Positions 2,576 through 52,107 of a DNA stretch of 64,000 nucleotides are shown here, one piece after another. The stretch lies in sequence record NC_061446.1, one strand, 5' to 3'. A model generated the notes under the pieces. That model was given only the letters and a program-made list of their open reading frames with translations, searched no databases and was not told where the DNA came from. The stretch's first letter is position 1. Each line of letters begins with the position of its first letter. The position numbers and the translations under genes were made by a program.

Positions 2576-3044
2576 CCGAGACTCCTAACGATTGAAGAAT
2601 TGTAGAACTTACATCGGAGAAGGCTTTAGCGATCAGTTTGGCAGCAGCCTTATCGACAACAAGTGTGCTGATTTTCCCTTTGGTGTTACACACAATAGTT
2701 TGCGGTGCGTATTGTGCGAGAGCCAAAGCGAATAGCAGATGGTTGCCTAGGTCACCAGTGATACTTACCTCTACGTCAAGCTCAGGCACGTAGATGTTCT
2801 GATTGATTCCGGCAACAAACTGCGCCAGCGCAACAGGGTCGAAGACAGGAGGCGCTGTGTCGTAATCCTCAGCAAGGTCAATTTGACCCGTCTCAGGATA
2901 GAAGCGAAAGGCCGCAGGGTCACTGATGATTCTGCCAAACAGTTCATCACTAACCTCAATGCAATCGTTGCCCGTCACTTCACGAACACGACCAACAATA
3001 GCGTTGGTCGTTAAGTTGATTCGAATTATCGGCATATTAATCAC
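2559..3044 (-). CDS. Putative tail-fibre assembly chaperone-like protein
   Basis: 161 aa, translationally coupled directly downstream of a collagen fibre gene. Confidence 0.5.
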   Translation of the reverse strand: MINMPIIRINLTTNAIVGRVREVTGNDCIEVSDELFGRIISDPAAFRFYPETGQIDLAEDYDTAPPVFDPVALAQFVAGINQNIYVPELDVEVSITGDLGNHLLFALALAQYAPQTIVCNTKGKISTLVVDKAAAKLIAKAFSDVSSTILQSLGVSDESVD

Positions 3045-3858
3045 CTACCGCAGTATACCAGAAGTCCCAACCAGCAGTGTTCGTGCCAGTAGACTTGATG
3101 GTGAAACCGCCTAACAAGGCGTTCTCATTCATCGCGCTCGTACCGTCCAGATTGTAGAGCTGGTAGGTCTTCGCTTGGTTGAGTGCAGCGTTCACGAAGG
3201 TAATCTGAATGCTGATACAACGGTTGATGAATGCCGTGTTAAACACAACGTGGATTGTATCAGTAGTTGACGCGTTCACGACTCGACCCATGTTCTGAGT
3301 AAAGCCAGTGTTCATATCACGGTTACTGCCAATCCATGCGTTCGGTATTACAGCGCCGGTCACAGGGTTAAGAGCTTGTGCTGTACGATATTCGTCGATA
3401 GCAGCATCTCGACCAGGACTACCAGTAGGTCCAGTAGGACCCGTAGGACCCACAGAGCCAGTGTTACCGGTAGCGCCGACAGGCCCAGTGTTACCTGTCG
3501 GTCCATTACGACCACGCGGTCCGCGAGGGCCCGGGCAGCCGTCTTCACCGTCACGCCCATCACGACCGTTAGCACCAGGAAGGCCGCGCAGACCTTCTTT
3601 ACCCTGTTTACCTTCGCGTCCTGACTTGAGCTGGTCGGCAGTAGGCAGCCCGATAACACTAGACTGACTACCATCTGGCCAAATGACTGTTAGAGTACCT
3701 GTAGTTGTGTCGAACTCCACACCCTGAGAGCCGGGAATCTTCGCAGCTTCTGTAGGGTCAATAAACTCTACAGATGTGCTAGTCTTCTTACCTAACACTT
3801 TGCCGATAGGGTATGCACCGCCGTCGATAAGTGAAGGATTAATCTTTGTAAGAGACAT
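3037..3858 (-). CDS. Collagen-like fibre protein 1
   Basis: About 24 uninterrupted Gly-X-Y triplets (GREGKQG...[13 protein letters not shown]) preceded by the FDTTTGTLT...GLPT module. Confidence 0.9.
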   Translation of the reverse strand: MSLTKINPSLIDGGAYPIGKVLGKKTSTSVEFIDPTEAAKIPGSQGVEFDTTTGTLTVIWPDGSQSSVIGLPTADQLKSGREGKQGKEGLRGLPGANGRDGRDGEDGCPGPRGPRGRNGPTGNTGPVGATGNTGSVGPTGPTGPTGSPGRDAAIDEYRTAQALNPVTGAVIPNAWIGSNRDMNTGFTQNMGRVVNASTTDTIHVVFNTAFINRCISIQITFVNAALNQAKTYQLYNLDGTSAMNENALLGGFTIKSTGTNTAGWDFWYTAVGD

Positions 3859-9021: not shown

Positions 9022-9513
9022 TTATGGACGTACCCAGATGGCGCCTGGTGGAATCTCTTGTTCGATAGCAGGGTCGGTATCTTGAACGAACACGGCCACG
9101 ACACCAGGATTACCAGGAGCGCCAGTAGGACCCGTAGGGCCTGTAGGACCAGCAGGGCCTCGGTTACCTACCCAGCCTTGCTTGCCTTGCAGACCATCAT
9201 TACCACGAGGGCCGGGACAGCCGTCAGTACCACGACGACCATCGTTACCCATGAGACCGTCAATACCGTCACGACCAGATGGACCTACGCCACCAGCAGG
9301 ACCGTAACCGATACTATGAATAGTAGGCAGCCCAGAGATTTGCAGCTTGCCAATATTGGGGATGTTGATTGCCAACAGACCAGTAAGCTGATCGAAAGAA
9401 CCGAAAAGCTGGCTGTCGTCTTCTGACGTATCAACGTTAATCCCACCTTGAGTCGCTACAACAGGACCAGATGCGTTGGCCTTGATAAGCGATATATCAA
9501 CCTTCTCTACCAT
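9022..9513 (-). CDS. Collagen-like fibre protein 2
   Basis: Gly-X-Y run with GCPG; GLPT module; C-terminal PGAIWVRP. Confidence 0.9.
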   Translation of the reverse strand: MVEKVDISLIKANASGPVVATQGGINVDTSEDDSQLFGSFDQLTGLLAINIPNIGKLQISGLPTIHSIGYGPAGGVGPSGRDGIDGLMGNDGRRGTDGCPGPRGNDGLQGKQGWVGNRGPAGPTGPTGPTGAPGNPGVVAVFVQDTDPAIEQEIPPGAIWVRP

Positions 9514-9523
9514 AACAACTCCC

Positions 9524-10156
9524 TTATGGCCAAGTTATATTCTGATCTTTGGTCGGGTCTACCCAGATGGTGCCAGCAGCAACGTTCCCTGGGTTCGTAG
9601 CGCTTACGATGATAGACAGACGACCGGCAGGTCCCGCAGGGCCAGTTGGTCCGGTAGGGCCTGTAGCACCTGTTGCGCCAGTAGGGCCAGTACCGCCACG
9701 AGGGCCAGTTGGGCCTGTAGGACCCATGGGACCAGTACGACCGTCAGGGCCAGTAGGACCGACAGGGCCCGGTAGACCATCACGACCATCTGGGCCAGGA
9801 AGACCCTGCTCGCCATCAGGCCCGATGTTACCGTCACAGCCCTGTTCTCCAGGACTACCGTCTCGTCCATCACGACCATCTTTACCATCAGCACCCGTTT
9901 CACCTCTGCCACCTTGTCGTCCTTCAGGTATATCAGCAGCGGTTGGGAACCCACCTACTTTAATTGACTGCCCGTTAGCAAACTTGAGAGTAAGAATACC
10001 AGAAGTTGCATCAAACGAGGAATCAGCAGTTACCTCTGAGGGTACGTCGGCATCATTGGGATCTATTGAAAGCACCCCAGACTGAGCGCGAATTGCAGCA
10101 GGCGTAGACGAAGAACCAGCCTGAATGAGACCGGTCTTAACTTTAATCAGACTCAT
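9524..10156 (-). CDS. Collagen-like fibre protein 3
   Basis: About 32 Gly-X-Y triplets with GCDG; FDATSGILT...GFPT module; C-terminal AGTIWVDP. Confidence 0.9.
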
Positions 10157-11598
10157 TACTTTTTCTCCGCTTTCGCAACAATATCCGTGTTGTGTGCGAG
10201 TACATCACCAACGAAGTAGCAGTCAAATGGATCGACGTCAATATCAACAGTCTGCACCAAATCGTCTACACGTCGGAACTCATAAACAGACACTGGCCCT
10301 TTACGACCTAGCACTGTATGTCCTGGCTCTACTTCTCGCGCAGGAACGTAACGCCACACGGATTGATCATATATCAACACTGGATGCTCATGTGTGAACT
10401 TCTGTCCGTTGATAATGAAGTAGTGGTCTTCCTGTCCGTACTTGAGAGCAGTCACAGTAGCGTTTACCAGATTGCCCTTCAAGCTCTTAGACGACCAATC
10501 ACGGAACTCTTTTGGCTGATTAGAGAAGCTGCGCAGGCTATCACCTACACGCAAGTTCTCAACGGCTTTCGGTCCAGTAATCGTTTCCACCTCAGAACCA
10601 AACACGATACAGCCAGATGTTGAAGTGTTGACAGGGTTACGCGCCACGACTGTCAGAGCAGAACTCACAGTAACAGTCGGACGTGACGTTTGACCCATAT
10701 CAGTTACTACGCAGCGGATAGTGCCTTTGATTGTACGATCAGCACCAAGTCCGAGACGCAGATAGAAGTTAACAATACACGTTGATGTAGTAGTCGCATC
10801 GAGCGTTACGCCCTCAGTAGTTGTGATAGACCACTGATACTTATATGGACCCACACCACCACGCGCATTGACAGGAAGATATGCGAGCGAGGTAAACACA
10901 TCAGAGCCTTGCACGGCACGTTGACCTACCATGTACAAGCTCGACACTGACGCAGCAAGAGGTGTTATCGTAGGCAGAGGCGGAGCAGGCGTCACGTTGG
11001 CAGTAGGGTACAGCCACACGAATACTCGACCATCTGTAGGCTGTGCAGACGATAGAACAGCAGTAGTGATTGGCGCTGGTCCAGTAGGACCTGTAGCTCC
11101 AGATATACAGCTTGCTCCAGTAGCGCCACGAGGACCGAGAACGCCGGGAGGACCATCAGGACCGTCGGGACCAGTAGGGCCTGTAGGACCCTCTCGTCCA
11201 GTATCACCCGTCTGACCATCAGGACCGTCACGTCCCGGTTCACCTACAGGACCTGTCTTGCCTCTATTGCCTACAGGGCCAGGACAACCCGGTCTGCCTG
11301 TTTCTCCATCACGACCATCACGCCCGTCTCGTCCAGGAGCACCGGGAGCGCCTCGACGTCCCGGTTTCCCTTCACCAAACATAGCTACAGTCGGAAGGCC
11401 GGGAACGTTTACTACATTCCCGTTCTTCTTGATGAATACTAACACACCTGTCTTGCTGTTAAACCTTACGCTGGCAATCTGAGTATCTGTCGCTAAGTCA
11501 CTCGACTCAAACCCGACACTACCATCAACACCAACCAGCGATTTACCTTCATCGTTAGCAGTTGTTTCGATTTGCGAAAGTTTTAACTGTGTTGTCAT
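10156..11598 (-). CDS. Collagen-like fibre protein 4 with an Ig-like domain and a C-terminal Hint domain
   Basis: Gly-X-Y run, beta-rich domain ([11 protein letters not shown]), then Hint motifs. Confidence 0.9.
10189..10611 (-). other. Hint (mini-intein/BIL-like) domain, 141 aa
   Basis: Block A C1-IVFGSEV (Cys330), block B T-H-E-H-P, block [22 protein letters not shown], followed by Thr+1; no homing endonuclease. Confidence 0.85.
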
Positions 11599-20727: not shown

Positions 20728-20750
20728 GTTAATTCTCCTCTGTTAGGCAC

Positions 20751-20758
20751 AAATTAGC
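20751..20758 (-). promoter_or_regulatory. GCTAATTT putative late-promoter motif
   Basis: 24 nt upstream of the PAAR start, just after a terminator. Confidence 0.65.
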
Positions 20759-20770
20759 TTGTTATGCAGT

Positions 20771-20807
20771 AGAAACGAAAACGGGCAACCCGAAGGCCGC
20801 CCGTTTT
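20771..20807 (-). terminator. Rho-independent terminator closing the non-coding segment
   Basis: AAAACGGGCGGCC-TTCG-GGTTGCCCGTTTTCGTTTC on the minus strand. Confidence 0.85.
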
Positions 20808-20810
20808 CTT

Positions 20811-22063: not shown

Positions 22064-22064
22064 T

Positions 22065-42804: not shown

Positions 42805-44820
42805 TTACATGCGGCGCAGACGGGACAGCTTATCTTCGAATGAGCCAGTGGAAGCTGAACTCTGGGATTGAACAGGTACGTCGCTCTGAGTCAGCAGTTC
42901 AGCGGCGTTGACCGGAGCTTTAGGCTGCGCGGCTACAACTTGCTGTTGAACAACTGGAGCACGTTCTGCGGTAACAGTACCAGCAGCCGCGTCGATAGAC
43001 TCAGAGATTTCGTTCTGCGCGACTTCGGACTTATTCATCAGGTCCATCGCTTTTGACAGCGCGGTCGTCAGGAAGTCTTTGCCGTGGGCGATGAATGCGC
43101 GTTCGACTACAGCGCGTGGTTCTTTGATGCCTGCTGCGGACAGCGAGCTAACCAGGCTTTCGACGATTGGGTTACGCACATCACCCCAGAAGTTTTTGGT
43201 AACGCCCAGCTGGGATGCAGACAGAGCAGCGACGAAACGATCAGTGTAAGCTGAGGTCGCTTCTTCGATAGTGCCCGTAACGTTCGCAGTAGCTTCGCTA
43301 ATACGTGCGTCAGATTCTGCCACCAGCAGTGCATCTACCGGCATTTCGATCTGATACGGCATAAAGCCGAATGCTTCACAAGTACCGGTCACTCCAGCGC
43401 TGTTAAGCGAGTGTGATACTGCACGGATGAAATTATCAGATGCGAAAGATTTCGCAGCGTTTTCTTCGCCAACTGCACCAGACACAGAAGCGAATGTTGC
43501 GCGAGCAATCGGCTGGCCGTCGTAGTACATATGTACAGTGTCGAGCTTGCCAACAGCGCGGCTCAGGCTAACCAGCTGAGGGTCAAGCGTGCCGTGTTGT
43601 GCTTGCGCGGTAGACAGGCTGTTGAAGACGCGGCTGACTGATTTGCTTTCAGAATCAAAATCATCTTCGTCATCGACGTCGAGATCATCTTCTTCCAGTT
43701 CTTCCTCGTCGTCGAGGTCTTCATCATCGAGGTCTTCATCCTCGTCAATGTCGTCTTCGTCTTCGAGATCGTCGTCAGAGCTGGATTCTGAATCGAAGTC
43801 CTCGTCCTCGTCTTCTTCTTCGAGGTCGTCCAGGTCTTCGTCATCTTCCAGATCTTCATCGTCAATGTCGTCCAGATCGTCTTCATCCAGATCTTCATCG
43901 TCGAGGTCGTCTTCGTCATCAATATCATCTTCATCATCGTTAGACGATTCAGAGTCGAAGTCTTCGTCCTCGTCATCAGATGAATCATCTTCATCCTCGA
44001 GGTCTTCTTCTTCGATAATATCAATGTCGCTGTCGTCGTCGCCAGATTGGGATGCAATCGGCTCGTCGACCAGCGCGGCAGAACAATGCGCACAGAACAC
44101 AGGCTCTTCATCAGAGCTTACAGTGAACGGCTGTTCGCAGTTAGCGGAGCAGCTATAGATGTGCGCTTCGACTTCGCCATTGGCGGCGTTGCTGGACAGA
44201 GCAGTGATAGCTTCTGGAGCTTCCTGCGCTTCGCAGTTCTCAACGGCCTGGCCGGTGTACGGGTCGAAGTTTACGGTAGTAGCAGCGTTGAAGCTACCAG
44301 TACCGGACAGTGCGGTAAACGCGTGTGCGTTGCTCAGAGCCAGAGCGAAGTTGCGTTGTGCAGCTTCGGCAGTCTCGCCGGTAGCAACCAGACCAGCGTG
44401 TTCAATCTGTTCGTCAGCAGAAGCGGATTCGGCCAGGAACTGAGTAACACGTTCGTCGGTGATTTCGGACAGGTCAGCAGAGCACGATGGGCAGCAGCCC
44501 TGAACCAGCGCGGCAGAATCAGAGATAACGTGGCTACCACAACCATCAAGACAGATGGTGTAATGAGCTTTCACATCACCAGCAGAAGACTGCGACTGGA
44601 CTTCGGCTTTCTCAACCAAATCAGGATGCTCCACCAGCAGTTCTTCACCGCCGTTCGGATTGTAGAGGTCAGCGCCACTTTGCGAAGCAAAGCCTACACC
44701 TTCAGCAGAACCATAAATCATCAGGTTCTGACCGGTTGCAGTGCGGCGAAAATTCTCTACTGCCTGATTATGGTTTTGACCGACACACAGGATACCCGCG
44801 AGTTGGGTAATCTTTGGCAT
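42805..44820 (-). CDS. Prohead scaffold/core protein with two Cys-rich modules and a long acidic tract
   Basis: GAGG SD before MPKITQ; CLDGCG...CCPSCS and CSANCE...CAHCS; ~125-aa D/E tract. Confidence 0.7.
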   Translation of the reverse strand: MPKITQLAGILCVGQNHNQAVENFRRTATGQNLMIYGSAEGVGFASQSGADLYNPNGGEELLVEHPDLVEKAEVQSQSSAGDVKAHYTICLDGCGSHVISDSAALVQGCCPSCSADLSEITDERVTQFLAESASADEQIEHAGLVATGETAEAAQRNFALALSNAHAFTALSGTGSFNAATTVNFDPYTGQAVENCEAQEAPEAITALSSNAANGEVEAHIYSCSANCEQPFTVSSDEEPVFCAHCSAALVDEPIASQSGDDDSDIDIIEEEDLEDEDDSSDDEDEDFDSESSNDDEDDIDDEDDLDDEDLDEDDLDDIDDEDLEDDEDLDDLEEEDEDEDFDSESSSDDDLEDEDDIDEDEDLDDEDLDDEEELEEDDLDVDDEDDFDSESKSVSRVFNSLSTAQAQHGTLDPQLVSLSRAVGKLDTVHMYYDGQPIARATFASVSGAVGEENAAKSFASDNFIRAVSHSLNSAGVTGTCEAFGFMPYQIEMPVDALLVAESDARISEATANVTGTIEEATSAYTDRFVAALSASQLGVTKNFWGDVRNPIVESLVSSLSAAGIKEPRAVVERAFIAHGKDFLTTALSKAMDLMNKSEVAQNEISESIDAAAGTVTAERAPVVQQQVVAAQPKAPVNAAELLTQSDVPVQSQSSASTGSFEDKLSRLRRM

Positions 44821-44896: not shown

Positions 44897-46021
44897 TTAA
44901 ATTTTTCTGCTATCAATGTCAGTCTGAGGAATATATCTGTTTTCGAAGTATTTCGAGACAATTTCAACACCATTTAAGGTATATACGTTGCGCAGGCTAT
45001 ATCCCCAAACCATCAGCTCCGCAAGCGTTGCGAAGTGCTCGGCGGGTACCGAACTAATGGTTCGCGCATTAAGCGAATCTGGATGGATTTTCTTACCCTT
45101 GATGGCCTGATCGAACTTCATGCGATCAACGTTACGAATCATCGTATGGTCCACAAAATGGGCCAGTTCGTGAGTAATAACGTGCGCCATACTCAGGCTA
45201 TTATATCCACCAAGTAAATGCACCAACTGCGCAGGATGGATTGAAATAGCGCCATACAGGAAGCCGTGTACGCGATACGTTGCGATATGGCTACCACCAC
45301 TATCCGAGTTAGCTTTTAACAGACCAACATACAGACGTTTGAATGGCAGTGCTATGTTCAGACCAATGCCAGGCATGACGTTTTCCTGAATGTCTTTAAG
45401 CACATAATCAGGAGGACTAACGCCGTTCTTCTCAAGCGTAACGCCCGGCACACGCAGGTCATCCATACCCATTATTTCAAGATGCACTTTACCGCACTTC
45501 TTAACAGGCTTGGTGGCGTAGTTGTTTGGCGTACCACCCGGATAAATTGCTGAGGCATATTGCAGTGGTTTGAAATTACCAAAATCAGGCATATCGTCAA
45601 CACGACGCTGAATAGCCTTTAATGAATCTGGCGTGTCTTCCTCAGCAGAGTCCTCAACAGATGCTTCCGGCTCAGGTTCTGGTGCAGGCTTTTTCTTGAT
45701 AGAAACTGGTTTGGGTTTTGGTGCTGGTGGCGCAGGCTTCTTCTGCTTCTCCTCATAAGGGGTGAAGTCAAAGCCAGGCTTAAAGAGCGCATCAGGTTTT
45801 GCAGTGAATGGGCGACTGTTCTGAATGAGCTTGTCACCGTCTTCTCCACTGATTGCATAGGCCTGATCGTATTTAGGATGGGCTATGTAGTACAGGTCGC
45901 TGTTCACTTTGAGAAGGCCAATGACCTCGCGCGGCTCCATGTGGACACCGTTTGAGATCATTGCCGCCTGACCGAGATAGCGATAGTACGAATAGTCAGC
46001 TATTGCTAAACCTTGTGGCAT
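44897..46021 (-). CDS. Shared-domain protein with a C-terminal HExxH zinc metallopeptidase (start revised to 46021)
   Basis: TGATG coupling to the protease stop; YYRYLG...REVIGL; VITHELAHFVDH (45158-45172) and a downstream AEHFA. Confidence 0.7.
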   Translation of the reverse strand: MPQGLAIADYSYYRYLGQAAMISNGVHMEPREVIGLLKVNSDLYYIAHPKYDQAYAISGEDGDKLIQNSRPFTAKPDALFKPGFDFTPYEEKQKKPAPPAPKPKPVSIKKKPAPEPEPEASVEDSAEEDTPDSLKAIQRRVDDMPDFGNFKPLQYASAIYPGGTPNNYATKPVKKCGKVHLEIMGMDDLRVPGVTLEKNGVSPPDYVLKDIQENVMPGIGLNIALPFKRLYVGLLKANSDSGGSHIATYRVHGFLYGAISIHPAQLVHLLGGYNSLSMAHVITHELAHFVDHTMIRNVDRMKFDQAIKGKKIHPDSLNARTISSVPAEHFATLAELMVWGYSLRNVYTLNGVEIVSKYFENRYIPQTDIDSRKI

Positions 46022-46800
46022 CAGGCCATCCTTAACAGATGTTCTTTGTATGTTGCAGCACACGCGAACGCTGGGTCGTCTACGCTACTGCACTCAAAGC
46101 CTGTCAGCATCTTGCAATCACGATAGACCAATCGGCCAGTACGCGCATCAAGATACGTTGGTTTGTTGAACGCCGTATGCGAACAGAAGTTACGATGTTT
46201 AGGCGTAACCAACTGACCACAGATACTGCACTTATACGCACGATAGGTTGTGCCTTTGCTGTACGTGTTCAGTTCACCGCTCATGATACGATCACAGCGC
46301 TCAGGACAACGAGAACGGTCGAAGGCCAGCAGCAACGTCAGACGCGCATGGTCACCACGGAAGTTCTTGAGCTTGGACAAGTTACTGTCGAAGATCATGC
46401 CCATGGCTTGGCGATAGTCTTTGTTGTTGTGTTCGATAAACGTCGGCTTACCAATGAACGTCTGATATGCAAGACGGCCCTGGTCAGGGTTGAACGTTAA
46501 CCACTCCTGCAGGCTAAACGCATCACCATTCGTGTTCGGCAGTTCAGTGATGTTTACCGGAACAGGCACGATGATGTAGTCGCGGATGTTGCGTGACGTG
46601 TTATACATCTCAGCCGCTTTAGGCAGCCACACGTTCACGTCAAGATTAAAAGAGCCTGTCTCAATACCGAAACGCGACGCATCCACACGGATAGACTTAG
46701 CTGTACGGCTAACATCTTCCTTGTGCATATCAATCGCGTTCAGTCCGACGAGGCCCATGTCCGAGGTATCAAACGACTCGGAGCGAATGGACTGGTCCAT
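46021..46800 (-). CDS. Prohead maturation protease (herpes/HK97-like serine protease fold, zinc-ribbon insert)
   Basis: PNTNGDAF, FIGKPTFIEHN, YSKG, CSICG...CSH, ECSSVDDPA. Confidence 0.8.
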   Translation of the reverse strand: MDQSIRSESFDTSDMGLVGLNAIDMHKEDVSRTAKSIRVDASRFGIETGSFNLDVNVWLPKAAEMYNTSRNIRDYIIVPVPVNITELPNTNGDAFSLQEWLTFNPDQGRLAYQTFIGKPTFIEHNNKDYRQAMGMIFDSNLSKLKNFRGDHARLTLLLAFDRSRCPERCDRIMSGELNTYSKGTTYRAYKCSICGQLVTPKHRNFCSHTAFNKPTYLDARTGRLVYRDCKMLTGFECSSVDDPAFACAATYKEHLLRMA

Positions 46801-46810
46801 CGTGTACTCC

Positions 46811-47242
46811 CTATTGGAATTTGTCGATATTGCTCTGCGTATTGGTCAAACGCACCTGACCTTCATCTGCTTGGAAGCAGTCAAGACCATTAACGCTGTT
46901 CAGCCAGTAACGTAAGCGGCCATTAGAAATTACTGCACTTTCGACAAATGCGGGAATTTCGAAGCCTTCTTTTGTCTTCACTAATACTTCGACGCCTGGG
47001 TAGAACACATCGAAGGACTTCGTGCTGAATATCGGTTTAACGATAGCAGATTCACAAACAGGGTGCTGGGCGTAGCGGCTGCTTATCATATAGATCGCCT
47101 CTTCCTTACCGATAAGGATAGAGTTGATAGTGCCACGCAAAATACACGGCGAACAGTGCTCCGAAGGAATTTCGAACGAAACAATGTCGCCTATGTTGTA
47201 GGCAAAAGAGAATTGCGGCATGTTAACCTCGCAGCGCACCAC
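46811..47242 (-). CDS. Hypothetical protein with two tandem SH3/KOW-like repeats
   Basis: YNIGDIVSF...GTINSI...IYMI and FYPGVEVLV...AFVESA...RYWL. Confidence 0.55.
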   Translation of the reverse strand: MVRCEVNMPQFSFAYNIGDIVSFEIPSEHCSPCILRGTINSILIGKEEAIYMISSRYAQHPVCESAIVKPIFSTKSFDVFYPGVEVLVKTKEGFEIPAFVESAVISNGRLRYWLNSVNGLDCFQADEGQVRLTNTQSNIDKFQ

Positions 47243-48104
47243 GCGCCCACGACTTAGCGAGAGCCAGAGTCATACGCGTCGGGTTATGAAGTTTGACTTC
47301 ACCTTTGTGGACGGCAGTGAACGGCTCATGAGGATTCTGACTGCGGCCAGAACGATAGGCAGCTTCATTGAATCCATCAAACAGCGTTACTACCCAGCCA
47401 GTGGATTTATCAGAGCATTCACCACAGGCTTTGTCCCACGCAATCTTACCGCACACACGTCCACCAGCGTTAATCGCATAACTGACCTGCTCAGTGCCTT
47501 TATAAATGTCAGAGGCTTTGAGCGTTTTGAAGGTCACACGCGACGATGATTCAGAGCGCGGCATCATCTTTTCTTTGATTGCTTCAACATCAAGCGAACC
47601 CCAGAAAGATTCAAACAGCGCGGCAAACTTCTGCTCAATAGGAAGTTCGATTGCGTTGATTTGTGCGATAGTGCTGGAGCTATCTTCCAGCACACGATTA
47701 AGGAAGTAGCCGCCTAAGATCACAGGCATCTGAGTGCCTTGTGAACCAGCAGTCAGGCCAGCCTTCTTACAGTAGATTTCAGACAGGCCGATAGCGAGAC
47801 GCGCAAGAGTCATGAACGTCTGCTTCTCGGTCGAGTTAGCAATCTCTGTATAGATACGCGCAGCGATGGCAGGAACAACAGTACGTTTCGCCACGCTCAG
47901 AATATCTTCCGGCTTAATAGGCTGGCCGAGCTTTTTACGCGCAGCCAATTCGAAAGCGTTAATCAGGCTGGCTTTGTTCGCTGCCGTCAACGACTCGCCT
48001 AACTTGATAGTCGTCAGCTCCGCGCTGCTCACTATCCCCTGTTGAGGCGTTTTCTCCAGTCGGCGTACTCCCGACGTCGATCTCACCAATCGCTTCACTG
48101 TCAT
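47223..48104 (-). CDS. Hypothetical protein (start revised to ATG 48104)
   Basis: AGGA SD 8 nt before MTVKRLVR; overlaps the GT gene 3' end by 146 nt. Confidence 0.6.
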   Translation of the reverse strand: MTVKRLVRSTSGVRRLEKTPQQGIVSSAELTTIKLGESLTAANKASLINAFELAARKKLGQPIKPEDILSVAKRTVVPAIAARIYTEIANSTEKQTFMTLARLAIGLSEIYCKKAGLTAGSQGTQMPVILGGYFLNRVLEDSSSTIAQINAIELPIEQKFAALFESFWGSLDVEAIKEKMMPRSESSSRVTFKTLKASDIYKGTEQVSYAINAGGRVCGKIAWDKACGECSDKSTGWVVTLFDGFNEAAYRSGRSQNPHEPFTAVHKGEVKLHNPTRMTLALAKSWARGALRG

Positions 48105-49212
48105 TTGTTTGTTCCTGAGTAGCAGGCTGCTGCATATAAGCAAGCAGACCAGAGTTCTGAATTGCTTCACCCAAATCTTCACCGCGGTGCATGGTAAGTT
48201 GGGCAAGGTAGTTGAGAGCAGGTTCAACCATACCGAGATTACGACAGCCCCAATAAGCTGTTTCGTAACATAGATCTAAATTAATAGAGGTCTGGTCAAA
48301 CAAGAAACTTTTTGGATTCTGCTTGGTCGCTTCGATGCCTTGAATAGCCATACCCACAGCATTCATCATATCGTTGTGACGATAGAAAATATCAGCAAGC
48401 ATACCGTAGCACTCAACGCGATCCGGGCGGAATGCAATCGCGCGATAACACGCAAAGATAGACTCCTGAGTGAATCCCTGTTTGAATGTTGCTTTCGCCA
48501 GCTCAATATTGGCAATAGCCACATAGTCAGCCCAGCGAGCAATGCCAGCGAGGCGATCTACTTCACGACGAGCATCATCAAGCAGGTCAGCACGATCACC
48601 GTAGCACACGGCATAGCAGAGTTCACGCGCATAGTAGAAACTGCAACGATCATCATGTGGATAATCACCCACATCCAGACCAAGCTCAAGCAGATAACCG
48701 CGCGGCTTTGTGTTGTCAGGGTAGTGGTCAGTTGCGAACGTTGCCTCTACAGTACGCAGACGCTGATCGGGTTTGCGCGACGACAGGACTTCATGCGCAC
48801 GATACTTCCAGAAGTAAGAGCGACGACGATACGCTTTCATCTGCTGGTAATGACTGTCACCGTTACGCATCAGAATCCAAACAGCTTCGGCATGTTTGAT
48901 GTGTTTGGTATTGCGAAGCGTCTCAACCCAATTAGGGTCATCGAAACGTTCGTCAATGTCAAGCCACACAACGAGGTCGTCCTCGGAGAACGGCGTAGCG
49001 GCCAGTTCACGACTCGCGCCCAGATTGCGCTCCTGTGATACGTCGAACACATGATACAGGTTAGGGTGCGTGAACGCCGAGATGATGTTCGTGGTTTGGT
49101 CTTCACTACCAGTGTCAACAATACTGATAGCATCGGCCGCAGCAACGTGCTCCAACCACTCACCGATGTTCTTTTCTTCATTACGGCAAATAGCCGCTAC
49201 GCAGATTCTCAT
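47959..49212 (-). CDS. Family 2 glycosyltransferase with C-terminal TPR-like repeats
   Basis: ICRNEEKNI, IVDTGSEDQT, DxD in WLDIDE, WKYRAHE, FYYARE, AIAFRPDRVECY. Confidence 0.9.
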   Translation of the reverse strand: MRICVAAICRNEEKNIGEWLEHVAAADAISIVDTGSEDQTTNIISAFTHPNLYHVFDVSQERNLGASRELAATPFSEDDLVVWLDIDERFDDPNWVETLRNTKHIKHAEAVWILMRNGDSHYQQMKAYRRRSYFWKYRAHEVLSSRKPDQRLRTVEATFATDHYPDNTKPRGYLLELGLDVGDYPHDDRCSFYYARELCYAVCYGDRADLLDDARREVDRLAGIARWADYVAIANIELAKATFKQGFTQESIFACYRAIAFRPDRVECYGMLADIFYRHNDMMNAVGMAIQGIEATKQNPKSFLFDQTSINLDLCYETAYWGCRNLGMVEPALNYLAQLTMHRGEDLGEAIQNSGLLAYMQQPATQEQTNDSEAIGEIDVGSTPTGENASTGDSEQRGADDYQVRRVVDGSEQSQPD

Positions 49213-49228
49213 ACATGCCTCATTTGGG

Positions 49229-50152
49229 TTATACTAAAATGTTGCCGCTATCCCACCACTGCTTGCCGTAAATATCAGACAGGCGATAGTCAAGAATAAG
49301 TGGCTGGTCAAGGTCGACTTGCGTTATGGTTCGCATTAATGAAGGACTCCAAACTGTTTTCTCCTCAGTGTAGAGTCTAATCTCCAATTCAATGTCGCCT
49401 TGTGAGTTCTTCGGTACGAACGGACTGGAGAAGTCTCCATCAAAGCCCGCACCAAGAGAATCGTCAAAGTAAGTGTACGCACGAATTTCTTCCGCACTGT
49501 TAATCACGGTCGGCGCATACGTCTGACGGTTATAGTAGGACGTGTAGTCCGCAACGGTTGATTGCATTGGCACACGTCGCTTGTAGATACGTGTTACACC
49601 TTTGCTGTCTGTTTCTGCGCGGTACTGATTGTAATACCAGTTTATCTGCGCAAACTTAACAGGCTTCAAAGTCTCCTGCCCGGCAGCGTACTTCATGAAC
49701 GGCTTCGCAGTGAAACGGTGGTATGTCTTCTGCGTGTTCAATCGGTAAAGCAGAATCTGGTACGTGTACCACTGATAAACATCAAGGGTAATCGTTCCTG
49801 AGTCAGACTGTTGCGTACCGTTAGTCAGGATGTAGGAGAAGCAGTCAGCACCAACGTAACCACTTCTCGGACTGTAGATAAACGCTTCGTTGAAAGTGTT
49901 TAGCCGCACAGTGCCTACCATAGGGTCATTGACCTTAATAGCAGAAAGGCGCCAACCCCTTTGAGCTGGCACCTTATCAAGCACACCCTCAGTAGGGCTA
50001 TGCAGTGTCACTTCATCACGAGCGCCCTGTAAGATCTTTTCGAGTGTTATCTCAGTTTCACCTGAGTTACGCACCCGCACTGTCAGGTTCGGAGCCAGTG
50101 GCTTATAGTTACGCCAGTAGTCGAACGTACAAGGCAAAGAGAGCATAATCAC
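49229..50152 (-). CDS. Virion protein with a cadherin/Big-like Ig domain
   Basis: GTVRLNTFNEAFIYSPRSGYVGADCFSYILTNG. Confidence 0.65.
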   Translation of the reverse strand: MIMLSLPCTFDYWRNYKPLAPNLTVRVRNSGETEITLEKILQGARDEVTLHSPTEGVLDKVPAQRGWRLSAIKVNDPMVGTVRLNTFNEAFIYSPRSGYVGADCFSYILTNGTQQSDSGTITLDVYQWYTYQILLYRLNTQKTYHRFTAKPFMKYAAGQETLKPVKFAQINWYYNQYRAETDSKGVTRIYKRRVPMQSTVADYTSYYNRQTYAPTVINSAEEIRAYTYFDDSLGAGFDGDFSSPFVPKNSQGDIELEIRLYTEEKTVWSPSLMRTITQVDLDQPLILDYRLSDIYGKQWWDSGNILV

Positions 50153-52107
50153 TCCAGTTTGTATTTGCTCTTGAACTCCGCAATGCTCATAACAGGAATG
50201 CCCTTGTCAATCGCTTTCTGTAGCTTCGCGGAACCAGAGCCAGGGTCTTTAGCGATCAGTATCGTCGTATCAGCTTTCATGCTGTCAGACGCTGTACCGC
50301 CAAGTTGGACAATACGTTGCATCAATTCTTTATCGCGGATGCCTGTGAACGCTACGTTAATCCCTTTCAGTTTGGCGCTAACCACCTTCACCTTCTTCGG
50401 AGCAACGAGAGTCACTTCCATCTCAACAGCCATCAGATAAGACTTAATGGCCGCATCTGCGATCTGTGGAGCCAGCTTATCAACACCGTGCATACTGCTA
50501 ATCTTTGTTGCTAGGTCAGCAGTATTACCTTTCTTCAAATAAGATTCGAGGTTAGGCACAGCATCAACAACCTTATCAAACGTCGTGTTAGCGCCGCGCA
50601 TGAAGTATGAAGCGGTAGCTTTAAGCCACGTATTCATCGGTACGCCAGCTTTCAACGCTTTCAGGTCTTTGGCCAGTTGACGACCACGAGAGTCACCAAC
50701 GATCTCACGCAACGTTGCCATAGGAGTCATGAACAATTGCTGAGGAGTTTTAACACCTGAAGCAACAAGCAGTTTACACGTACTCGGTCCAGTGTTCGCA
50801 ACGTCAAGCCCTTTCAAGAACGAGCCAAGCATACGAGAGTCAGCAGCACTGGTCTTCGTCTTAGCAACGAACTCAACGCCATTGATCTTGTACTGTACGT
50901 CAGGCAGCTTAGGCTTCTTAGCAGGCTTGAGAATCTCCATGATGTATGGGATTACCTTGCCGCTTCGAATCAACTTAACCTTAGCACCTGGGCCAAGAGG
51001 ACGCTTAGGTCCCATGACAGCACCTTTCTTCTTGGGCTTGAGATAGCCGTGCTCAACGTAGAAACCGTTGTGCGCAGAAGCACGTTCAACCGTAACACCG
51101 CCAGGCATAACAGTAGGCGGGAAGATTGCAACAGGAGCCAGCACACCGTACTTGGACTCTTGATAGATTACGTCTTTGACAGTCACGATAACAGTGTCCG
51201 ACTCAACGTTCATCTTGAACTTGAAAGCGTGTTTAGGATTGCTCGCAGTAGCTTTCGGCGTAGGAACATCGCGGGTCATTACAATCCCATCGAGTTCATA
51301 CTTTGCCTTAGCGATGCGTTTGTCCAACCACGGAATGAGTTCTTCTTCCGACTCAAAACGCATAGGGCCGAAGTGGCGAACTACTTCGAATCCCCATTTC
51401 TCCAGCAGCTTGAACTGCGAAGACTGTTTGAGTGTAGCACCTTTACCGCCGATGATACCGAAGCATACCATGTGGACGTACTTGAACTCTTTCGCTGTTT
51501 CGAAGTTACGCACCAGACCGGACGCTGCGTTACGAGCGGCTTTGAAGCGACCACCAGCAGACTCATGCAGCTTTGCCATAAAGGTCTTGTATGGTATTAA
51601 CGCTTCACAGCGTAACACCACTTGGCCCTTCTCAGAGATTTTCTGAGGAATACGCATAGCAGGCAGGTGCTGCGACACGTCTTTACCATGAGTTGCATCG
51701 CCACGAGTAAGCGCACGAACAGGCACGCCACCCTCGTAAACGATTTCAATACTCAGGCCGTCGAGCTTGTCAGTCAGAATCCAGTCAACGTCTTCGGCGA
51801 GAGCTTTGGTTAGTTGCTTACCACCCAGAGTGAACTGGTCGAGACTTGCCATTGGCACAGGCAGCTTAACGTCTGAATCATCACGCGCACCAACCTTGCG
51901 CGCCAGCTTAGATTTAGGCCAGCGCTTGTCGATGTAGGTACGGATGTAGTCGTACACAGCGTCCGATATCAGACCTTCCGAATCAGTGTGGAACGCATCA
52001 TCAAGATGCGCCACAAGTTTCGTTGCCTGCGTCAAATTGAGCGTGTCGAGAACCTTATCAGGATTCTTTTCGAGCCGCTTCAAAGAGATTTGCATGTTAT
52101 TCTCCAT
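50149..52107 (-). CDS. ligA: NAD-dependent DNA ligase
   Basis: Motif I KLDGLS, ALTRGD, LRCEA, RNAASG, ELDGIV, AFKF, OB fold, HhH, C-terminal BRCT (VAFTG). Confidence 0.95.
   Translation of the reverse strand: MENNMQISLKRLEKNPDKVLDTLNLTQATKLVAHLDDAFHTDSEGLISDAVYDYIRTYIDKRWPKSKLARKVGARDDSDVKLPVPMASLDQFTLGGKQLTKALAEDVDWILTDKLDGLSIEIVYEGGVPVRALTRGDATHGKDVSQHLPAMRIPQKISEKGQVVLRCEALIPYKTFMAKLHESAGGRFKAARNAASGLVRNFETAKEFKYVHMVCFGIIGGKGATLKQSSQFKLLEKWGFEVVRHFGPMRFESEEELIPWLDKRIAKAKYELDGIVMTRDVPTPKATASNPKHAFKFKMNVESDTVIVTVKDVIYQESKYGVLAPVAIFPPTVMPGGVTVERASAHNGFYVEHGYLKPKKKGAVMGPKRPLGPGAKVKLIRSGKVIPYIMEILKPAKKPKLPDVQYKINGVEFVAKTKTSAADSRMLGSFLKGLDVANTGPSTCKLLVASGVKTPQQLFMTPMATLREIVGDSRGRQLAKDLKALKAGVPMNTWLKATASYFMRGANTTFDKVVDAVPNLESYLKKGNTADLATKISSMHGVDKLAPQIADAAIKSYLMAVEMEVTLVAPKKVKVVSAKLKGINVAFTGIRDKELMQRIVQLGGTASDSMKADTTILIAKDPGSGSAKLQKAIDKGIPVMSIAEFKSKYKLE

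What the first reader, a model, noticed from the sequence alone, without database searches (positions are those of the whole stretch)
47959..49212. GT2-TPR glycosyltransferase plus GPT-rich collagens: a possible glycosylated-hair system
Seen: a GT2 with DxD and TPR-like repeats lies among late structural genes, and four collagens are rich in Gly-Pro-Thr/Gly-Ala-Thr. Established: GT2-TPR enzymes modify proteins, and the Bacillus/Clostridioides BclA collagen-like hairs are O-glycosylated (SgtA in C. difficile). Inference: the phage glycosylates its own collagen hairs or other virion proteins, which could aid stability without hydroxyproline, shielding or adhesion.
Basis: partly seen in the sequence, partly recalled or inferred. 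Interest (0 to 1): 0.75.

Follow-up and report, generated by a model that had tools for sequence, protein, structure and literature searches.

The report
Phage glycosyltransferase tied to collagen fibres
A jumbo Erwinia phage carries a sugar-adding enzyme whose relatives in spore-forming bacteria and many other phages nearly always sit beside a threonine-rich collagen-like gene, so it probably coats the phage's own collagen-like fibres with sugars, though nobody has tested this.

Summary
The window is Erwinia phage pEa_SNUABM_30, an Alexandravirus jumbo myovirus of the "hairy" lineage. ORF 47959-49212(-), gp143, is a 417-aa soluble GT2 enzyme with a D85-x-D87 motif and a C-terminal TPR domain. 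Four collagen-like ORFs lie 37-45 kb away in the tail-fibre module.

Its best structural matches are the peptide glycosyltransferases ThuS/SunS. Its best sequence match among solved structures is the catalytic domain of GmaR.

New evidence bears on the target:
- In 28 of 35 bacterial loci encoding close relatives, a GPT-rich collagen-like gene lies within about 550 bp of the GT gene. Some partners carry a BclA_C domain, and one locus sits among sporulation genes.
- In 27 of 73 unrelated viral contigs, a collagen-like gene lies within 1.5 kb, inside structural modules.
- The sister group of the jumbo-phage clade consists of collagen-adjacent bacterial enzymes.
- PaBG and NCTB keep both the GT and the four collagens. 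RSL1 lacks both.
- The characterised C. difficile SgtA has the same architecture and O-GlcNAcylates Thr in GPT triplets of BclA3.

Caveats: in this phage the GT gene is unlinked from the collagens and sits in a ligase-to-prohead-protease block. SgtA was not aligned directly. No glycan data exist, and it is not shown that the collagens form the "hairs".

This is a new variant of a known kind.

The parts
47959..49212 (-). gp143: a 417-aa soluble GT2 (GT-A) + TPR glycosyltransferase
   Evidence: ORF. Pfam GT2 E 1.4e-8. AF2 pLDDT 86. Foldseek top hits ThuS/SunS at E 1e-12 over about 380 columns. No transmembrane segment: maximum 19-residue hydropathy 0.97.
48703..49212 (-). GT-A catalytic domain, residues 1 to about 170. 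Invariant E12, D33-T-G-S36, D38, R68, D85-x-D87-E88, W135, H140-E141, H163, K169
   Evidence: Alignments A1 and A2. The profile matches the GmaR GT domain 22ao at E 1e-20 over positions 3-164.
48952..48960 (-). DxD motif (D85-I-D87), the presumed ligand for the divalent metal and nucleotide-sugar
   Evidence: Translation gives WLDIDE. Invariant in all 32 phage and bacterial homologues. Aligns with DAD of GmaR.
48133..48693 (-). Helical linker plus TPR repeats, residues 174-360; presumed acceptor-binding or oligomerisation domain
   Evidence: DSSP helices in the model. Consensus-TPR matches at 231-300. Foldseek hits to OGT TPR, MamA and CTPR.
47962..48120 (-). Disordered acidic, Ser/Thr/Gln-rich tail, residues 365-417; variable, and absent from JA-type and bacterial homologues
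   Evidence: pLDDT below 50. Alignment A1.
3037..3858 (-). gp101, collagen-like fibre protein (273 aa; 24 Gly-X-Y triplets, 7 with Thr at Y); candidate acceptor
   Evidence: PHROG tail-fibre families and NCBIfam Scl/Lcl collagen matches.
9022..9513 (-). gp105, collagen-like fibre protein (163 aa; 21 triplets, 3 with Thr at Y); candidate acceptor
9524..10156 (-). gp106, collagen-like fibre protein (210 aa; 31 triplets, 10 with Thr at Y, 6 GPT); candidate acceptor
10156..11598 (-). gp107, collagen-like protein (480 aa; 29 triplets, 7 with Thr at Y) with a C-terminal Hint-like domain; candidate acceptor
   Evidence: Pfam Collagen E 1.4e-14, PT-HINT E 2.7e-5. phrog_38766 'virion structural protein' E 2e-250.
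49229..50146 (-). gp144, a conserved upstream neighbour of the GT; all-beta, Ig-like (Big_9). Probably a virion protein; no role in glycosylation is shown
   Evidence: Pfam Big_9 E 1.3e-5. Syntenic in NCTB and in viral loci. AF2 pLDDT 66; weak top hit to the phage 7-7-1 collar.
47223..47990 (-). gp142, downstream neighbour whose start overlaps the GT stop by 32 nt; function unknown. Its C-terminal ~100 aa are conserved in NCTB and PaBG
46021..46800 (-). gp140, prohead maturation protease; marks the conserved block ligase-gp144-GT-gp142-gp141-protease
   Evidence: Annotation. 40-52% identical in NCTB, PaBG and Lu11 with the same gene order.

Best explanation
gp143 is a cytoplasmic, metal-dependent, inverting GT2 (GT-A) glycosyltransferase fused to a TPR domain. 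It belongs to the family that includes collagen-coupled bacterial enzymes of the SgtA type.

Proposed mechanism: during late infection gp143 uses a host UDP-sugar. The DxD motif (D85/D87) binds the metal and nucleotide-sugar. The TPR domain holds the protein acceptor. A single beta-linked monosaccharide, most plausibly GlcNAc or a hexose, is transferred to Thr/Ser hydroxyls. The most likely acceptors are the Gly-X-Thr triplets of the phage's four collagen-like fibre proteins (gp101, gp105, gp106, gp107), modified before or during their trimerisation and attachment to the virion.

Shown here: the fold, the motifs, family membership, solubility, the genomic coupling of the family to collagen genes, and the phyletic pattern.

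Inferred: activity, donor sugar, acceptor identity, timing, and any benefit such as helix stabilisation without hydroxyproline, protease or antibody shielding, or adhesion.
For: Enzyme class:
- GT2 Pfam hit and invariant DxD.
- Confident AF2 model of a GT-A domain plus TPR.
- Full-length Foldseek matches to the peptide glycosyltransferases ThuS/SunS at E 1e-12.
- The profile matches the catalytic domain of GmaR at E 1e-20.
- No transmembrane helix.

Family-level coupling to collagen, in loci found through GT motifs only:
- 28 of 35 bacterial loci have a Thr-rich collagen-like ORF within about 550 bp, mostly directly upstream on the same strand.
- Collagen-ORF density is 3.55 per 10 kb within 1.5 kb of the GT, against 0-0.2 per 10 kb beyond.
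- gp143 alone matches these 355-367-aa enzymes at E 1e-13 to 5e-27, collinear to about residue 338.
- The two contexts checked are chromosomal, one of them spoIIGA-sigE-[collagen]-GT...sigG. Two partners have a BclA_C domain.
- More than 540 viral contigs encode relatives. Among the 73 non-jumbo loci of the best 80, 27 have a collagen ORF within 1.5 kb. Density falls from 1.46 per 10 kb to 0.09 per 10 kb at 5-10 kb.
- Four such contigs were checked and are true phages, with the pair inside the structural module.
- Of 41 GT clusters at 70% identity or more, 26 have an adjacent collagen.

Phylogeny: the jumbo-phage clade (SH-aLRT 99) is joined next by 19 collagen-adjacent bacterial enzymes (SH-aLRT 99).

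Phyletic pattern within the lineage:
- GT plus the same four collagen genes occur in PaBG and NCTB.
- The gp107 family co-occurs with the GT in Erwinia, Dickeya, Yersinia, Salmonella and Alcaligenes phage records.
- RSL1 lacks both when its whole genome is scanned.

Precedent: C. difficile SgtA is 358 aa, with a GT-A domain at 1-260 and TPR at 262-358. Its gene lies next to bclA3. In vitro, with Mn2+, it transfers beta-O-GlcNAc from UDP-GlcNAc to Thr (and Ser) of GPT-repeat peptides (PMC7157674).
Against: - In this phage and its whole lineage the GT gene is not next to a collagen gene. It sits 37-45 kb away in a conserved block, ligase-gp144-GT-gp142-gp141-prohead protease. That placement could point to a head-related or other acceptor.
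- Both the GT and the collagens are core genes of the lineage, so co-occurrence within it is weak evidence. RSL1 is a single data point.
- Thr occupancy at Y in the phage collagens (14-32%) is lower than in most GT-adjacent partners (40-90%). GPT triplets also stabilise bacterial collagens without any sugar.
- Identity to the bacterial enzymes is only 22-25%, and the TPR half aligns in only some of them. Acceptor specificity may therefore have shifted.
- SgtA itself was never aligned.
- 46 of the 73 viral relatives have no collagen ORF within 1.5 kb.
- No published glycan or proteomic evidence was found for this lineage.
Confidence: 0.55

Rival explanations
1. gp143 is a protein glycosyltransferase, but its acceptor is another virion or morphogenesis protein. 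Candidates are a head protein, a decoration protein, or one of its conserved neighbours gp144, gp142 or gp141. This would resemble the capsid and tail-tube glycosylation reported for mycobacteriophages.
For: The GT sits in a block with the prohead protease that is conserved down to about 25% GT identity in PaBG, Lu11 and NCTB, even where the major head gene lies elsewhere. The GT stop overlaps the gp142 start. gp144 is an Ig-like, probably structural protein. The major head protein has a Ser/Thr-rich stretch at residues 321-340. In two unrelated phage contigs the collagen-GT pair also follows the head genes. Phage-encoded virion glycosylation is cited for mycobacteriophages.
Against: Outside the jumbo lineage the recurrent partner of this GT family is a collagen-like gene. 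No collagen run lies near the GT in jumbo loci, and no non-collagen partner recurs. The window contains no mucin-like Ser/Thr-rich domain.
Confidence: 0.15
2. gp143 modifies a host molecule: a surface polysaccharide or LPS precursor (superinfection exclusion or receptor masking), or a host protein such as flagellin. This would fit the database labels 'beta-1,4-glycosyltransferase', 'GtrB-like' and 'moron/host takeover'.
For: PHROG 13126 is labelled beta-1,4-glycosyltransferase in the 'moron, auxiliary metabolic gene and host takeover' category, and there are weak GtrB-like hits at E 2e-6. PaBG authors listed the gene as a LOS beta-1,4-glucosyltransferase among metabolic genes. GmaR, the closest solved relative by sequence, is known from the literature (my own knowledge, not tested here) to glycosylate flagellin.
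Against: There is no transmembrane segment and no gtrA/gtrC-like neighbour. The labels trace to weak similarity, not to experiments. The gene is a fixed core gene inside a morphogenesis block of a lytic jumbo lineage infecting several host genera, unlike sporadic moron genes. Family-wide adjacency is to collagen genes, not to polysaccharide loci.
Confidence: 0.1
3. gp143 glycosylates phage DNA bases to evade restriction.
For: Some phage GT-A enzymes do glycosylate hydroxymethylated pyrimidines (bioRxiv 10.1101/2023.12.21.572611). Relatives of this phage encode cytosine methyltransferases and other modification-type genes elsewhere in their genomes.
Against: The DNA GT-A enzymes are described as JGT/TarP-like, with R...DDD...EDY/F motifs, and lie next to C5-methyltransferase/5mYOX or ThyS genes. 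That paper mentions no TPR. gp143 has DID plus HE motifs and a TPR domain, and its neighbours are morphogenesis genes. Its best structural matches act on peptides.
Confidence: 0.03
4. The protein has mainly a non-catalytic role through its TPR domain, as an assembly chaperone or regulator. GmaR, for comparison, is also an anti-repressor.
For: One GmaR entry (7x9r) is titled 'antirepressor GmaR'. gp143 has a lineage-specific disordered acidic tail.
Against: All presumed catalytic and nucleotide-binding residues are invariant from Alexandravirus to bacterial homologues at about 23% identity. This argues that enzymatic activity is maintained.
Confidence: 0.04

Closest known systems
Clostridioides difficile SgtA (CD3350), the O-GlcNAc transferase of the collagen-like exosporium protein BclA3
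   Same: Single chain with an N-terminal GT-A domain and C-terminal TPR repeats. SgtA is 358 aa, against a folded core of about 360 aa in gp143. It is soluble and Mn2+/Mg2+-dependent, consistent with a DxD enzyme. Its acceptors are Thr (or Ser) in GPT triplets of a collagen-like region (PMC7157674). Bacterial relatives of gp143 have the same size and the same pairing with a collagen gene, some carrying a BclA_C domain and one lying in a sporulation locus.
   Different: Direct sequence homology of gp143 to SgtA was not tested, because the sequence could not be obtained here. sgtA lies immediately upstream of bclA3, whereas gp143 is 37-45 kb from the phage collagen genes. gp143 is viral, in a Gram-negative host, and has an extra 53-residue acidic tail. 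Its donor sugar is unknown.
Glycocin S-/O-glycosyltransferases SunS and ThuS (PDB 7msn, 7msk)
   Same: These are the best full-length structural matches: E 1e-12, about 380 aligned columns, GT-A + TPR in about 420 aa. Profile sequence matches score E 1e-7 to 1e-8. They glycosylate ribosomal peptides.
   Different: TM-score is only about 0.5, with a different domain orientation, and identity is 13-16%. Their substrates are small bacteriocin precursors encoded next to the enzyme, and no such peptide gene is evident here. According to the literature (my own knowledge, not tested here) they link sugars to Cys.
Listeria GmaR catalytic domain (PDB 22ao; also 7x9r)
   Same: This is the closest solved catalytic domain by sequence: E 3.7e-7 with gp143 alone and 1e-20 with the profile. 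The nucleotide-binding DTGS-x-D, DxD and HE motifs all align. It has GT2 + TPR architecture.
   Different: GmaR is longer (one entry has 448 residues) and is also an anti-repressor. Its known acceptor is flagellin (my own knowledge). Similarity to gp143 (32 bits) is much weaker than that of the collagen-adjacent bacterial enzymes (54-100 bits).
Mycobacteriophage virion glycosylation by phage-encoded glycosyltransferases
   Same: A phage-encoded enzyme is proposed to glycosylate the phage's own structural proteins in the cytoplasm. This is a known precedent, cited in papers found.
   Different: The primary paper was not read here, and whether those enzymes are GT2-TPR was not checked. The reported targets are capsid and tail-tube subunits (cited knowledge), not collagen-like fibres, and the host is an actinobacterium.
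GtrB-type O-antigen conversion glycosyltransferases of temperate phages
   Same: They share the GT2 catalytic domain, with weak PHROG hits at E 2e-6.
   Different: GtrB enzymes are membrane-anchored and work with GtrA and GtrC (established knowledge). gp143 has no transmembrane segment and no such neighbours, but it does have a TPR domain.

Membership tests
GT2 / GT-A fold glycosyltransferases | Pfam Glycos_transf_2 domain scoring above the gathering threshold | tested here: met
   PF00535 at 35.3 bits against a 23.3-bit cut-off, residues 5-112.
GT2 / GT-A fold glycosyltransferases | DxD metal and nucleotide-sugar motif at the end of a beta-strand, conserved across the family | tested here: met
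   D85-I-D87 is invariant in alignments A1 and A2 and aligns to DAD of GmaR.
GT2 / GT-A fold glycosyltransferases | Rossmann-like alpha/beta GT-A fold | tested here: met
   AF2 pLDDT is above 90 over residues 1-170, with alternating strands and helices. Foldseek hits include SunS, ThuS, TarS, WrtF and RmlT.
GT2-TPR protein/peptide glycosyltransferases (SunS/ThuS/GmaR/SgtA type) | N-terminal GT-A domain followed by C-terminal TPR repeats in one soluble chain | tested here: met
   No transmembrane segment.
GT2-TPR protein/peptide glycosyltransferases (SunS/ThuS/GmaR/SgtA type) | Transfers sugar to a protein or peptide acceptor | not testable with these tools
   Requires an enzyme assay or glycoproteomics.
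SgtA-like collagen O-glycosyltransferases | Sequence homology to C. difficile SgtA | not tested
   The SgtA sequence could not be retrieved. It was not among the 36 genome loci or the top 120 of 3,719 hits. Only architecture and size were compared, from PMC7157674.
SgtA-like collagen O-glycosyltransferases | Gene adjacent to a GPT-rich collagen-like gene | tested here: not met
   In this phage the nearest Gly-X-Y run is about 36 kb away. The feature is met in relatives: 28/35 bacterial loci have one adjacent and 27/73 viral loci have one within 1.5 kb.
SgtA-like collagen O-glycosyltransferases | A GPT-type collagen-like protein encoded in the same genome | tested here: met
   There are four such ORFs in the window. 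The same four occur in PaBG and NCTB. RSL1 lacks both the GT and the collagens.
SgtA-like collagen O-glycosyltransferases | Phylogenetic grouping with collagen-adjacent enzymes | tested here: met
   The starred clade of 38 rows holds 15 jumbo rows, 19 collagen-adjacent bacterial rows and four other rows (two from jumbo-size viral contigs). This was a quick IQ-TREE search that gave long-branch warnings.
SgtA-like collagen O-glycosyltransferases | Adds beta-O-GlcNAc to Thr of GPT triplets | not testable with these tools
   Requires biochemistry.
GtrB-type bactoprenol glucosyltransferases (O-antigen conversion) | C-terminal transmembrane helices and gtrA/gtrC partner genes | tested here: not met
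   Maximum 19-residue hydropathy is 0.97. The neighbours are gp142, gp144, the ligase and the protease.
Phage DNA-base glycosyltransferases (GT-A, JGT-like) | R...DDD...EDY/F active-site motifs, and location beside C5-methyltransferase/5mYOX or ThyS genes | tested here: not met
   The motifs in gp143 are DID-E and HE. Its neighbours are morphogenesis genes. The criteria come from bioRxiv 10.1101/2023.12.21.572611.
Bacterial/phage collagen-like proteins (the four candidate acceptors) | Long uninterrupted Gly-X-Y repeat with a collagen family match | tested here: met
   Runs of 21-31 triplets. Pfam Collagen E 1.4e-14 for gp107. NCBIfam Scl/Lcl and PHROG collagen-like tail families for all four.

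The most novel reading that the evidence does not exclude
A phage-encoded SgtA-like GT2-TPR enzyme O-glycosylates collagen-like virion fibres. This collagen-plus-glycosyltransferase pairing would be a widespread and so far unrecognised structural module. It is present in hundreds of phage lineages (more than 540 viral contigs encode relatives, and about a third of those sampled have the collagen gene within 1.5 kb). It is shared with the exosporium 'hairs' of spore-forming bacteria. In the 'hairy' jumbo myoviruses, including phages of plant pathogens used for biocontrol, the glycosylated collagen fibres would be the hair-like appendages or short fibres. They would then affect particle stability, adsorption or immune recognition.
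Probability: 0.45. Interest if true: 0.75.

Novelty: new variant of a known kind. Interest (0 to 1): 0.62.

Why it matters
Post-translational glycosylation of phage particles has been demonstrated in only a few cases. Phage glycosyltransferases are usually assumed to act on DNA or on the host surface, and papers on relatives of this phage and on freshwater actinophages assume exactly that.

If this family glycosylates collagen-like fibres, three things follow:
- A large set of 'glycosyltransferase' and 'collagen-like tail fibre' annotations in phage genomes would gain a concrete, testable function.
- Phage fibres would be linked mechanistically to the glycosylated BclA-type hairs of bacterial spores.
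- It would explain how short collagen triple helices could be stabilised or shielded without hydroxyproline.

For jumbo Erwinia and Dickeya phages being developed for crop protection, virion glycans could affect environmental stability and host adsorption.

The prediction can be tested directly with standard virion glycoproteomics and a peptide assay already established for SgtA.

Tried and rejected
- **SgtA sequence.** I tried to obtain it for a direct alignment. The genome scan used very specific GT motifs and returned 36 loci without C. difficile. A profile search listed only the best 120 of 3,719 hits, none of them named as C. difficile. The direct test therefore remains undone.
- **Distant homologue contexts.** P0050 is a stand-alone bacterial gene and is uninformative. 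P0051 lies in an actinophage contig with no collagen run in the 12 kb held.
- **Promoter and terminator scan, 40-55 kb.** Counts were at or below the shuffled expectation, so it says nothing about operon structure.
- **Search for mucin-like Ser/Thr-rich acceptors.** Among all 53 annotated proteins of the window there is no outstanding candidate, only a short Ser/Thr-rich stretch in the major head protein.
- **Co-occurrence within the jumbo lineage.** I gave it little weight, because the GT and the collagens are both core genes with conserved synteny. RSL1 is the only informative contrast.
- **Voja-6.** It has a distant protease relative and no GT hit. Only 68 kb was fetched, and its genome organisation is too different to count it as a lineage member. 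Left unfinished.
- **gp144 structure.** Confidence was low (pLDDT 66), so the match to a phage collar protein is only a hint.
- **Rejected readings.** The GtrB-like and DNA-glycosyltransferase readings were considered and rejected on the missing transmembrane segment, motifs and neighbours.
- **Literature.** The primary Y3 'hairy Myoviridae' paper is not in the library. No paper found describes a GT2-TPR/collagen pairing in phages.
Full report
**Identity of the window.** Bases 47000-50200 are 100% identical to Erwinia phage pEa_SNUABM_30 (NC_061446.1/MZ443778, 259,771 bp, genus Alexandravirus). Window coordinate + 62000 gives the record coordinate. The phage is close to Dickeya phage AD1 (88.7% DNA identity here). 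Its GT is 71.5% identical in protein to that of Erwinia phage Y3. AD1 and Y3 are described as 'hairy Myoviridae', and Y3 has a tail sheath decorated with hair-like appendages (PMC6143709; PMC13282480).

**Observation check.**
- The reported coordinates are exactly a 417-aa minus-strand ORF, gp143.
- It has a Pfam GT2 domain above threshold.
- It has one DxD motif, D85-I-D87.
- A TPR region is seen by sequence at residues 231-300. In a confident AlphaFold model (pLDDT 86) helices run from 174 to 360, followed by a disordered acidic tail at 365-417.
- There is no transmembrane segment.
- Four minus-strand ORFs (3037-3858, 9022-9513, 9524-10156, 10156-11598) carry 21-31 uninterrupted Gly-X-Y triplets with clusters of GPT, GAT and GNT. 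They match collagen-like and tail-fibre families.
- These ORFs lie in the tail-fibre/baseplate module, 37-45 kb from the GT.
- The GT lies between an NAD-dependent ligase and the prohead protease, and the major head protein is six genes away.

**What kind of enzyme it is.**
- Foldseek against the PDB puts the glycocin peptide glycosyltransferases ThuS and SunS first: E about 1e-12, about 380 aligned columns, the same GT-A + TPR layout and the same size. TPR proteins and other GT2 enzymes follow.
- By sequence, the closest solved catalytic domain is GmaR: E 3.7e-7 with gp143 alone and 1e-20 with a profile. The DTGS-x-D, DxD and HE motifs align.
- The database label 'beta-1,4-glycosyltransferase' comes from PHROG 13126 and from an older similarity-based name in PaBG. 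It does not rest on experiment.
- A GtrB-type role is unlikely, because there is no membrane anchor and there are no gtr partners.
- The DNA-modifying GT-A enzymes described in bioRxiv 10.1101/2023.12.21.572611 have other motifs and other neighbours, and no TPR is mentioned.

**Distribution and synteny.**
- Close homologues occur almost only in jumbo phages: Alexandra-, Y3-, Yoloswag- and JA-type phages and Yersinia fHe-Yen9-02.
- Full-length relatives at about 25% identity exist in PaBG, Lu11 and NCTB. There the order ligase-(gp144)-GT-(gp142)-(gp141)-protease is retained, even though in PaBG the major head gene lies more than 120 kb away.
- The GT is therefore a core gene of this lineage at a fixed position.
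- A profile search of 1.84 billion representative proteins found 51,523 hits, 1,299 of them below 1e-30. Most are 350-370 aa and match over their full length. Named members come from Clostridiales, Oscillospiraceae and Cellulosilyticum and are labelled generically.

**The decisive comparative result.** I scanned one genome per prokaryotic species using only two GT motifs taken from the phage alignment. This returned 36 loci: one misbinned phage contig and 35 bacterial MAG or genome contigs. They are mostly Bacilli and Clostridia, with contigs labelled Muribaculaceae, Actinomycetes, Rhodospirillaceae and Hyphomicrobiales.
- In 28 of the 35, an ORF with at least 7 Gly-X-Y triplets lies within about 550 bp of the GT gene. 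Usually 40-90% of its Y positions are Thr.
- In 23 it lies directly upstream on the same strand, at 6-180 bp.
- Collagen-ORF density is 3.55 per 10 kb within 1.5 kb of the GT, and 0-0.2 per 10 kb further out.
- gp143 alone matches these 355-367-aa enzymes at E 1e-13 to 5e-27, collinear up to residue 338.
- Nineteen residues are invariant across phage and bacterial members, including E12, DTGS, D38, R68, D-x-D-E, H140-E141 and H163.
- Two contexts examined are chromosomal. One reads spoIIGA-type peptidase, sigma factor, collagen-like gene, GT..., sigma factor.
- Two of the partner proteins have a BclA C-terminal domain.

These are therefore BclA-like/SgtA-like pairs of spore-formers.

**The same pairing in other phages.** More than 540 IMG/VR contigs encode relatives.
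- Among the 73 non-jumbo loci of the best 80, 27 have a Thr-rich collagen-like ORF within 1.5 kb, mostly directly upstream on the same strand. The ORFs are often 400-1,200 aa.
- Forty loci have one within 10 kb.
- Density falls from 1.46 to 0.09 per 10 kb with distance.
- Four of these contigs were checked and are genuine phages, with the pair inside the structural module. The layouts are portal...head/protease...collagen-GT...tail fibre; head...collagen-GT; and collagen (with an S74 chaperone domain)-GT-tail spike...terminase-portal.
- Of 41 GT clusters at 70% identity or more, 26 have an adjacent collagen gene.
- In a quick maximum-likelihood tree of 120 sequences, the jumbo-phage enzymes form one clade (SH-aLRT 99). 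The next supported clade (99) adds 19 collagen-adjacent bacterial enzymes.
- The tree carries long-branch warnings and an arbitrary root, so it shows proximity only.

**Phyletic pattern inside the lineage.**
- PaBG, scanned over its whole genome, has the GT and the same four collagen-like tail-fibre genes in syntenic order.
- NCTB has them too.
- RSL1 is the most distant relative that shares the head protease. It has no GT2-TPR homologue (best tblastn E 0.17; no profile hit at E of 1 or below) and no collagen-like run anywhere in its 231 kb.
- This is one co-absence, and both genes are otherwise core genes, so it is supportive but weak.

**Experimental precedent.** C. difficile SgtA is a 358-aa protein with a GT-A domain (1-260) and TPR repeats (262-358). 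Its gene lies next to bclA3. The recombinant enzyme, with Mn2+ and UDP-GlcNAc, adds beta-O-GlcNAc to Thr (and also Ser) of GPT-repeat peptides (PMC7157674). Architecture, size, cofactor logic and gene pairing all match the bacterial relatives found here. Direct homology with SgtA could not be tested, because its sequence was not retrievable with the tools.

**Most likely mechanism.**
- Shown: gp143 is a soluble GT-A/TPR enzyme with an intact active site, and it belongs to a family that is genomically coupled to GPT-type collagen-like proteins.
- Inferred: late in infection it uses a host UDP-sugar to add a beta-linked monosaccharide to Thr/Ser of Gly-X-Thr triplets in gp101, gp105, gp106 and gp107, with the TPR domain engaging the acceptor. 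GT2 enzymes invert configuration, which is established knowledge.
- Only one GT gene lies in this window. The rest of the genome was not examined.
- I put this at about 0.55.

**Main reservations.**
- The gene's conserved position is beside the prohead protease rather than beside the collagens.
- Thr content in the phage collagens is lower than in most GT-adjacent partners.
- The TPR half is divergent.
- There is no glycan evidence of any kind.

**Rivals.** Another virion or morphogenesis protein as acceptor (0.15), a host target (0.10), a regulatory or chaperone role (0.04), and DNA (0.03).

**Hairs.** Whether the collagen-like proteins are the 'hairs' is not established. All four share an N-terminal domain and sit in the baseplate/fibre module.

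**Novelty.** Papers found here treat this gene, or GT genes of other phages, as metabolic, as DNA-protective or as surface-modifying. None describes a GT2-TPR/collagen module in phages. Virion glycosylation by phage enzymes is known from mycobacteriophages (cited in papers), and collagen glycosylation by SgtA is known. This finding is therefore a new variant of known kinds: a viral, Gram-negative-host case in which the two genes are unlinked. It sits on top of a widespread adjacency that appears not to have been noted.

**Limits of the evidence.**
- E-values are relative to candidate stretches only.
- Collagen ORFs were called by a simple rule: at least 7 Gly-X-Y triplets, and runs with under 10% Pro at X and under 10% Thr at Y were excluded.
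- MAG taxonomic labels may be wrong.
- Many bacterial loci come from related gut MAGs, so they are not fully independent.
- The viral set is the best 80 of more than 540.

Noticed in passing
window 20728-22064: A 1.3-kb stretch between the PAAR gene gp112 and gp113 has no annotated gene. It has no ORF of 112 aa or more, no tRNA and no Rfam match. Even so, it keeps its length and 70-86% identity across Alexandravirus genomes, where it is mostly unannotated. Unexplained.
   Followed up: partly
window 10156-11598 (-), residues ~330-473: The collagen-like protein gp107 ends in a Hint-like domain (PT-HINT E 2.7e-5, Hint_2 E 8e-4, both below Pfam cut-offs). The NCTB orthologue is annotated 'contains intein domain', and NCTB has further intein-domain fibre genes. 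This suggests C-terminal autoprocessing, analogous to the S74 chaperone domain seen on a collagen fibre in viral contig L104.
   Followed up: partly
window 49229-50146 (-): gp144 is the conserved upstream neighbour of the GT. It is an all-beta protein with a Big_9/cadherin-like Ig domain. A low-confidence model (pLDDT 66) has as its top fold hit the collar protein of Agrobacterium phage 7-7-1 (E 2.4e-6, TM 0.24-0.35).
   Followed up: partly
window 47962-48120 (-), GT residues 365-417: gp143 carries a 53-residue disordered, acidic, Ser/Thr/Gln-rich tail. The tail is variable. It is present in the Alexandra, Y3, Yersinia and Yoloswag-type homologues but absent from JA-type phage enzymes and from all bacterial relatives. 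Its role is unknown.
   Followed up: no
window 44897-46021 (-) and 52134-54020 (-); also 42805-44820 (-): Two proteins flanking the GT block (gp139, which also has a weak metallopeptidase match, and gp146) share an N-terminal KMPT-N domain (E 4e-30 and 5e-19). gp146 and gp138 contain very long Asp/Glu-rich tracts. gp138 is annotated 'ATPase' but has no Pfam match.
   Followed up: no
window 40887-41987 (-), residues 321-340: The major head protein gp136 has a short Ser/Thr-rich stretch near its C-terminus, with 8 of 20 residues Ser or Thr. It could be an alternative glycosylation site, but this is speculative.
   Followed up: no
L137:30261-36498 (Ralstonia phage RSL1, record 165261-171498): RSL1 lacks both the GT2-TPR enzyme and the collagens. 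It does carry a separate sugar cluster: a sulfotransferase, three glycosyltransferases, two nucleotidyltransferases and an APS kinase.
   Followed up: no
BFVD matches to the gp143 model: Full-length GT2-TPR-like folds (TM about 0.6) appear in giant viruses: Harvfovirus, Satyrvirus, several Pithovirus-like genomes, Cedratvirus and Indivirus. According to the literature (own knowledge, not checked here), giant viruses also have collagen-like proteins and glycosylated fibrils. No adjacency test was done.
   Followed up: no
L053:5558-11895 (gut metagenome contig): In a bacterial relative, the collagen-like gene and its GT2-TPR partner are inserted between the spoIIGA-type peptidase/sigma-factor pair and a second sigma factor. 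That places the pair inside the core sporulation sigma locus.
   Followed up: no
window 1751-2575 (-); L014:17408-18229 (PaBG): An HNH endonuclease gene sits just downstream of the collagen gp101/gp100 pair, and the same is true in PaBG (gp236-gp235-HNH gp234). This is a conserved and unusual position for a homing-type endonuclease inside the fibre module.
   Followed up: no
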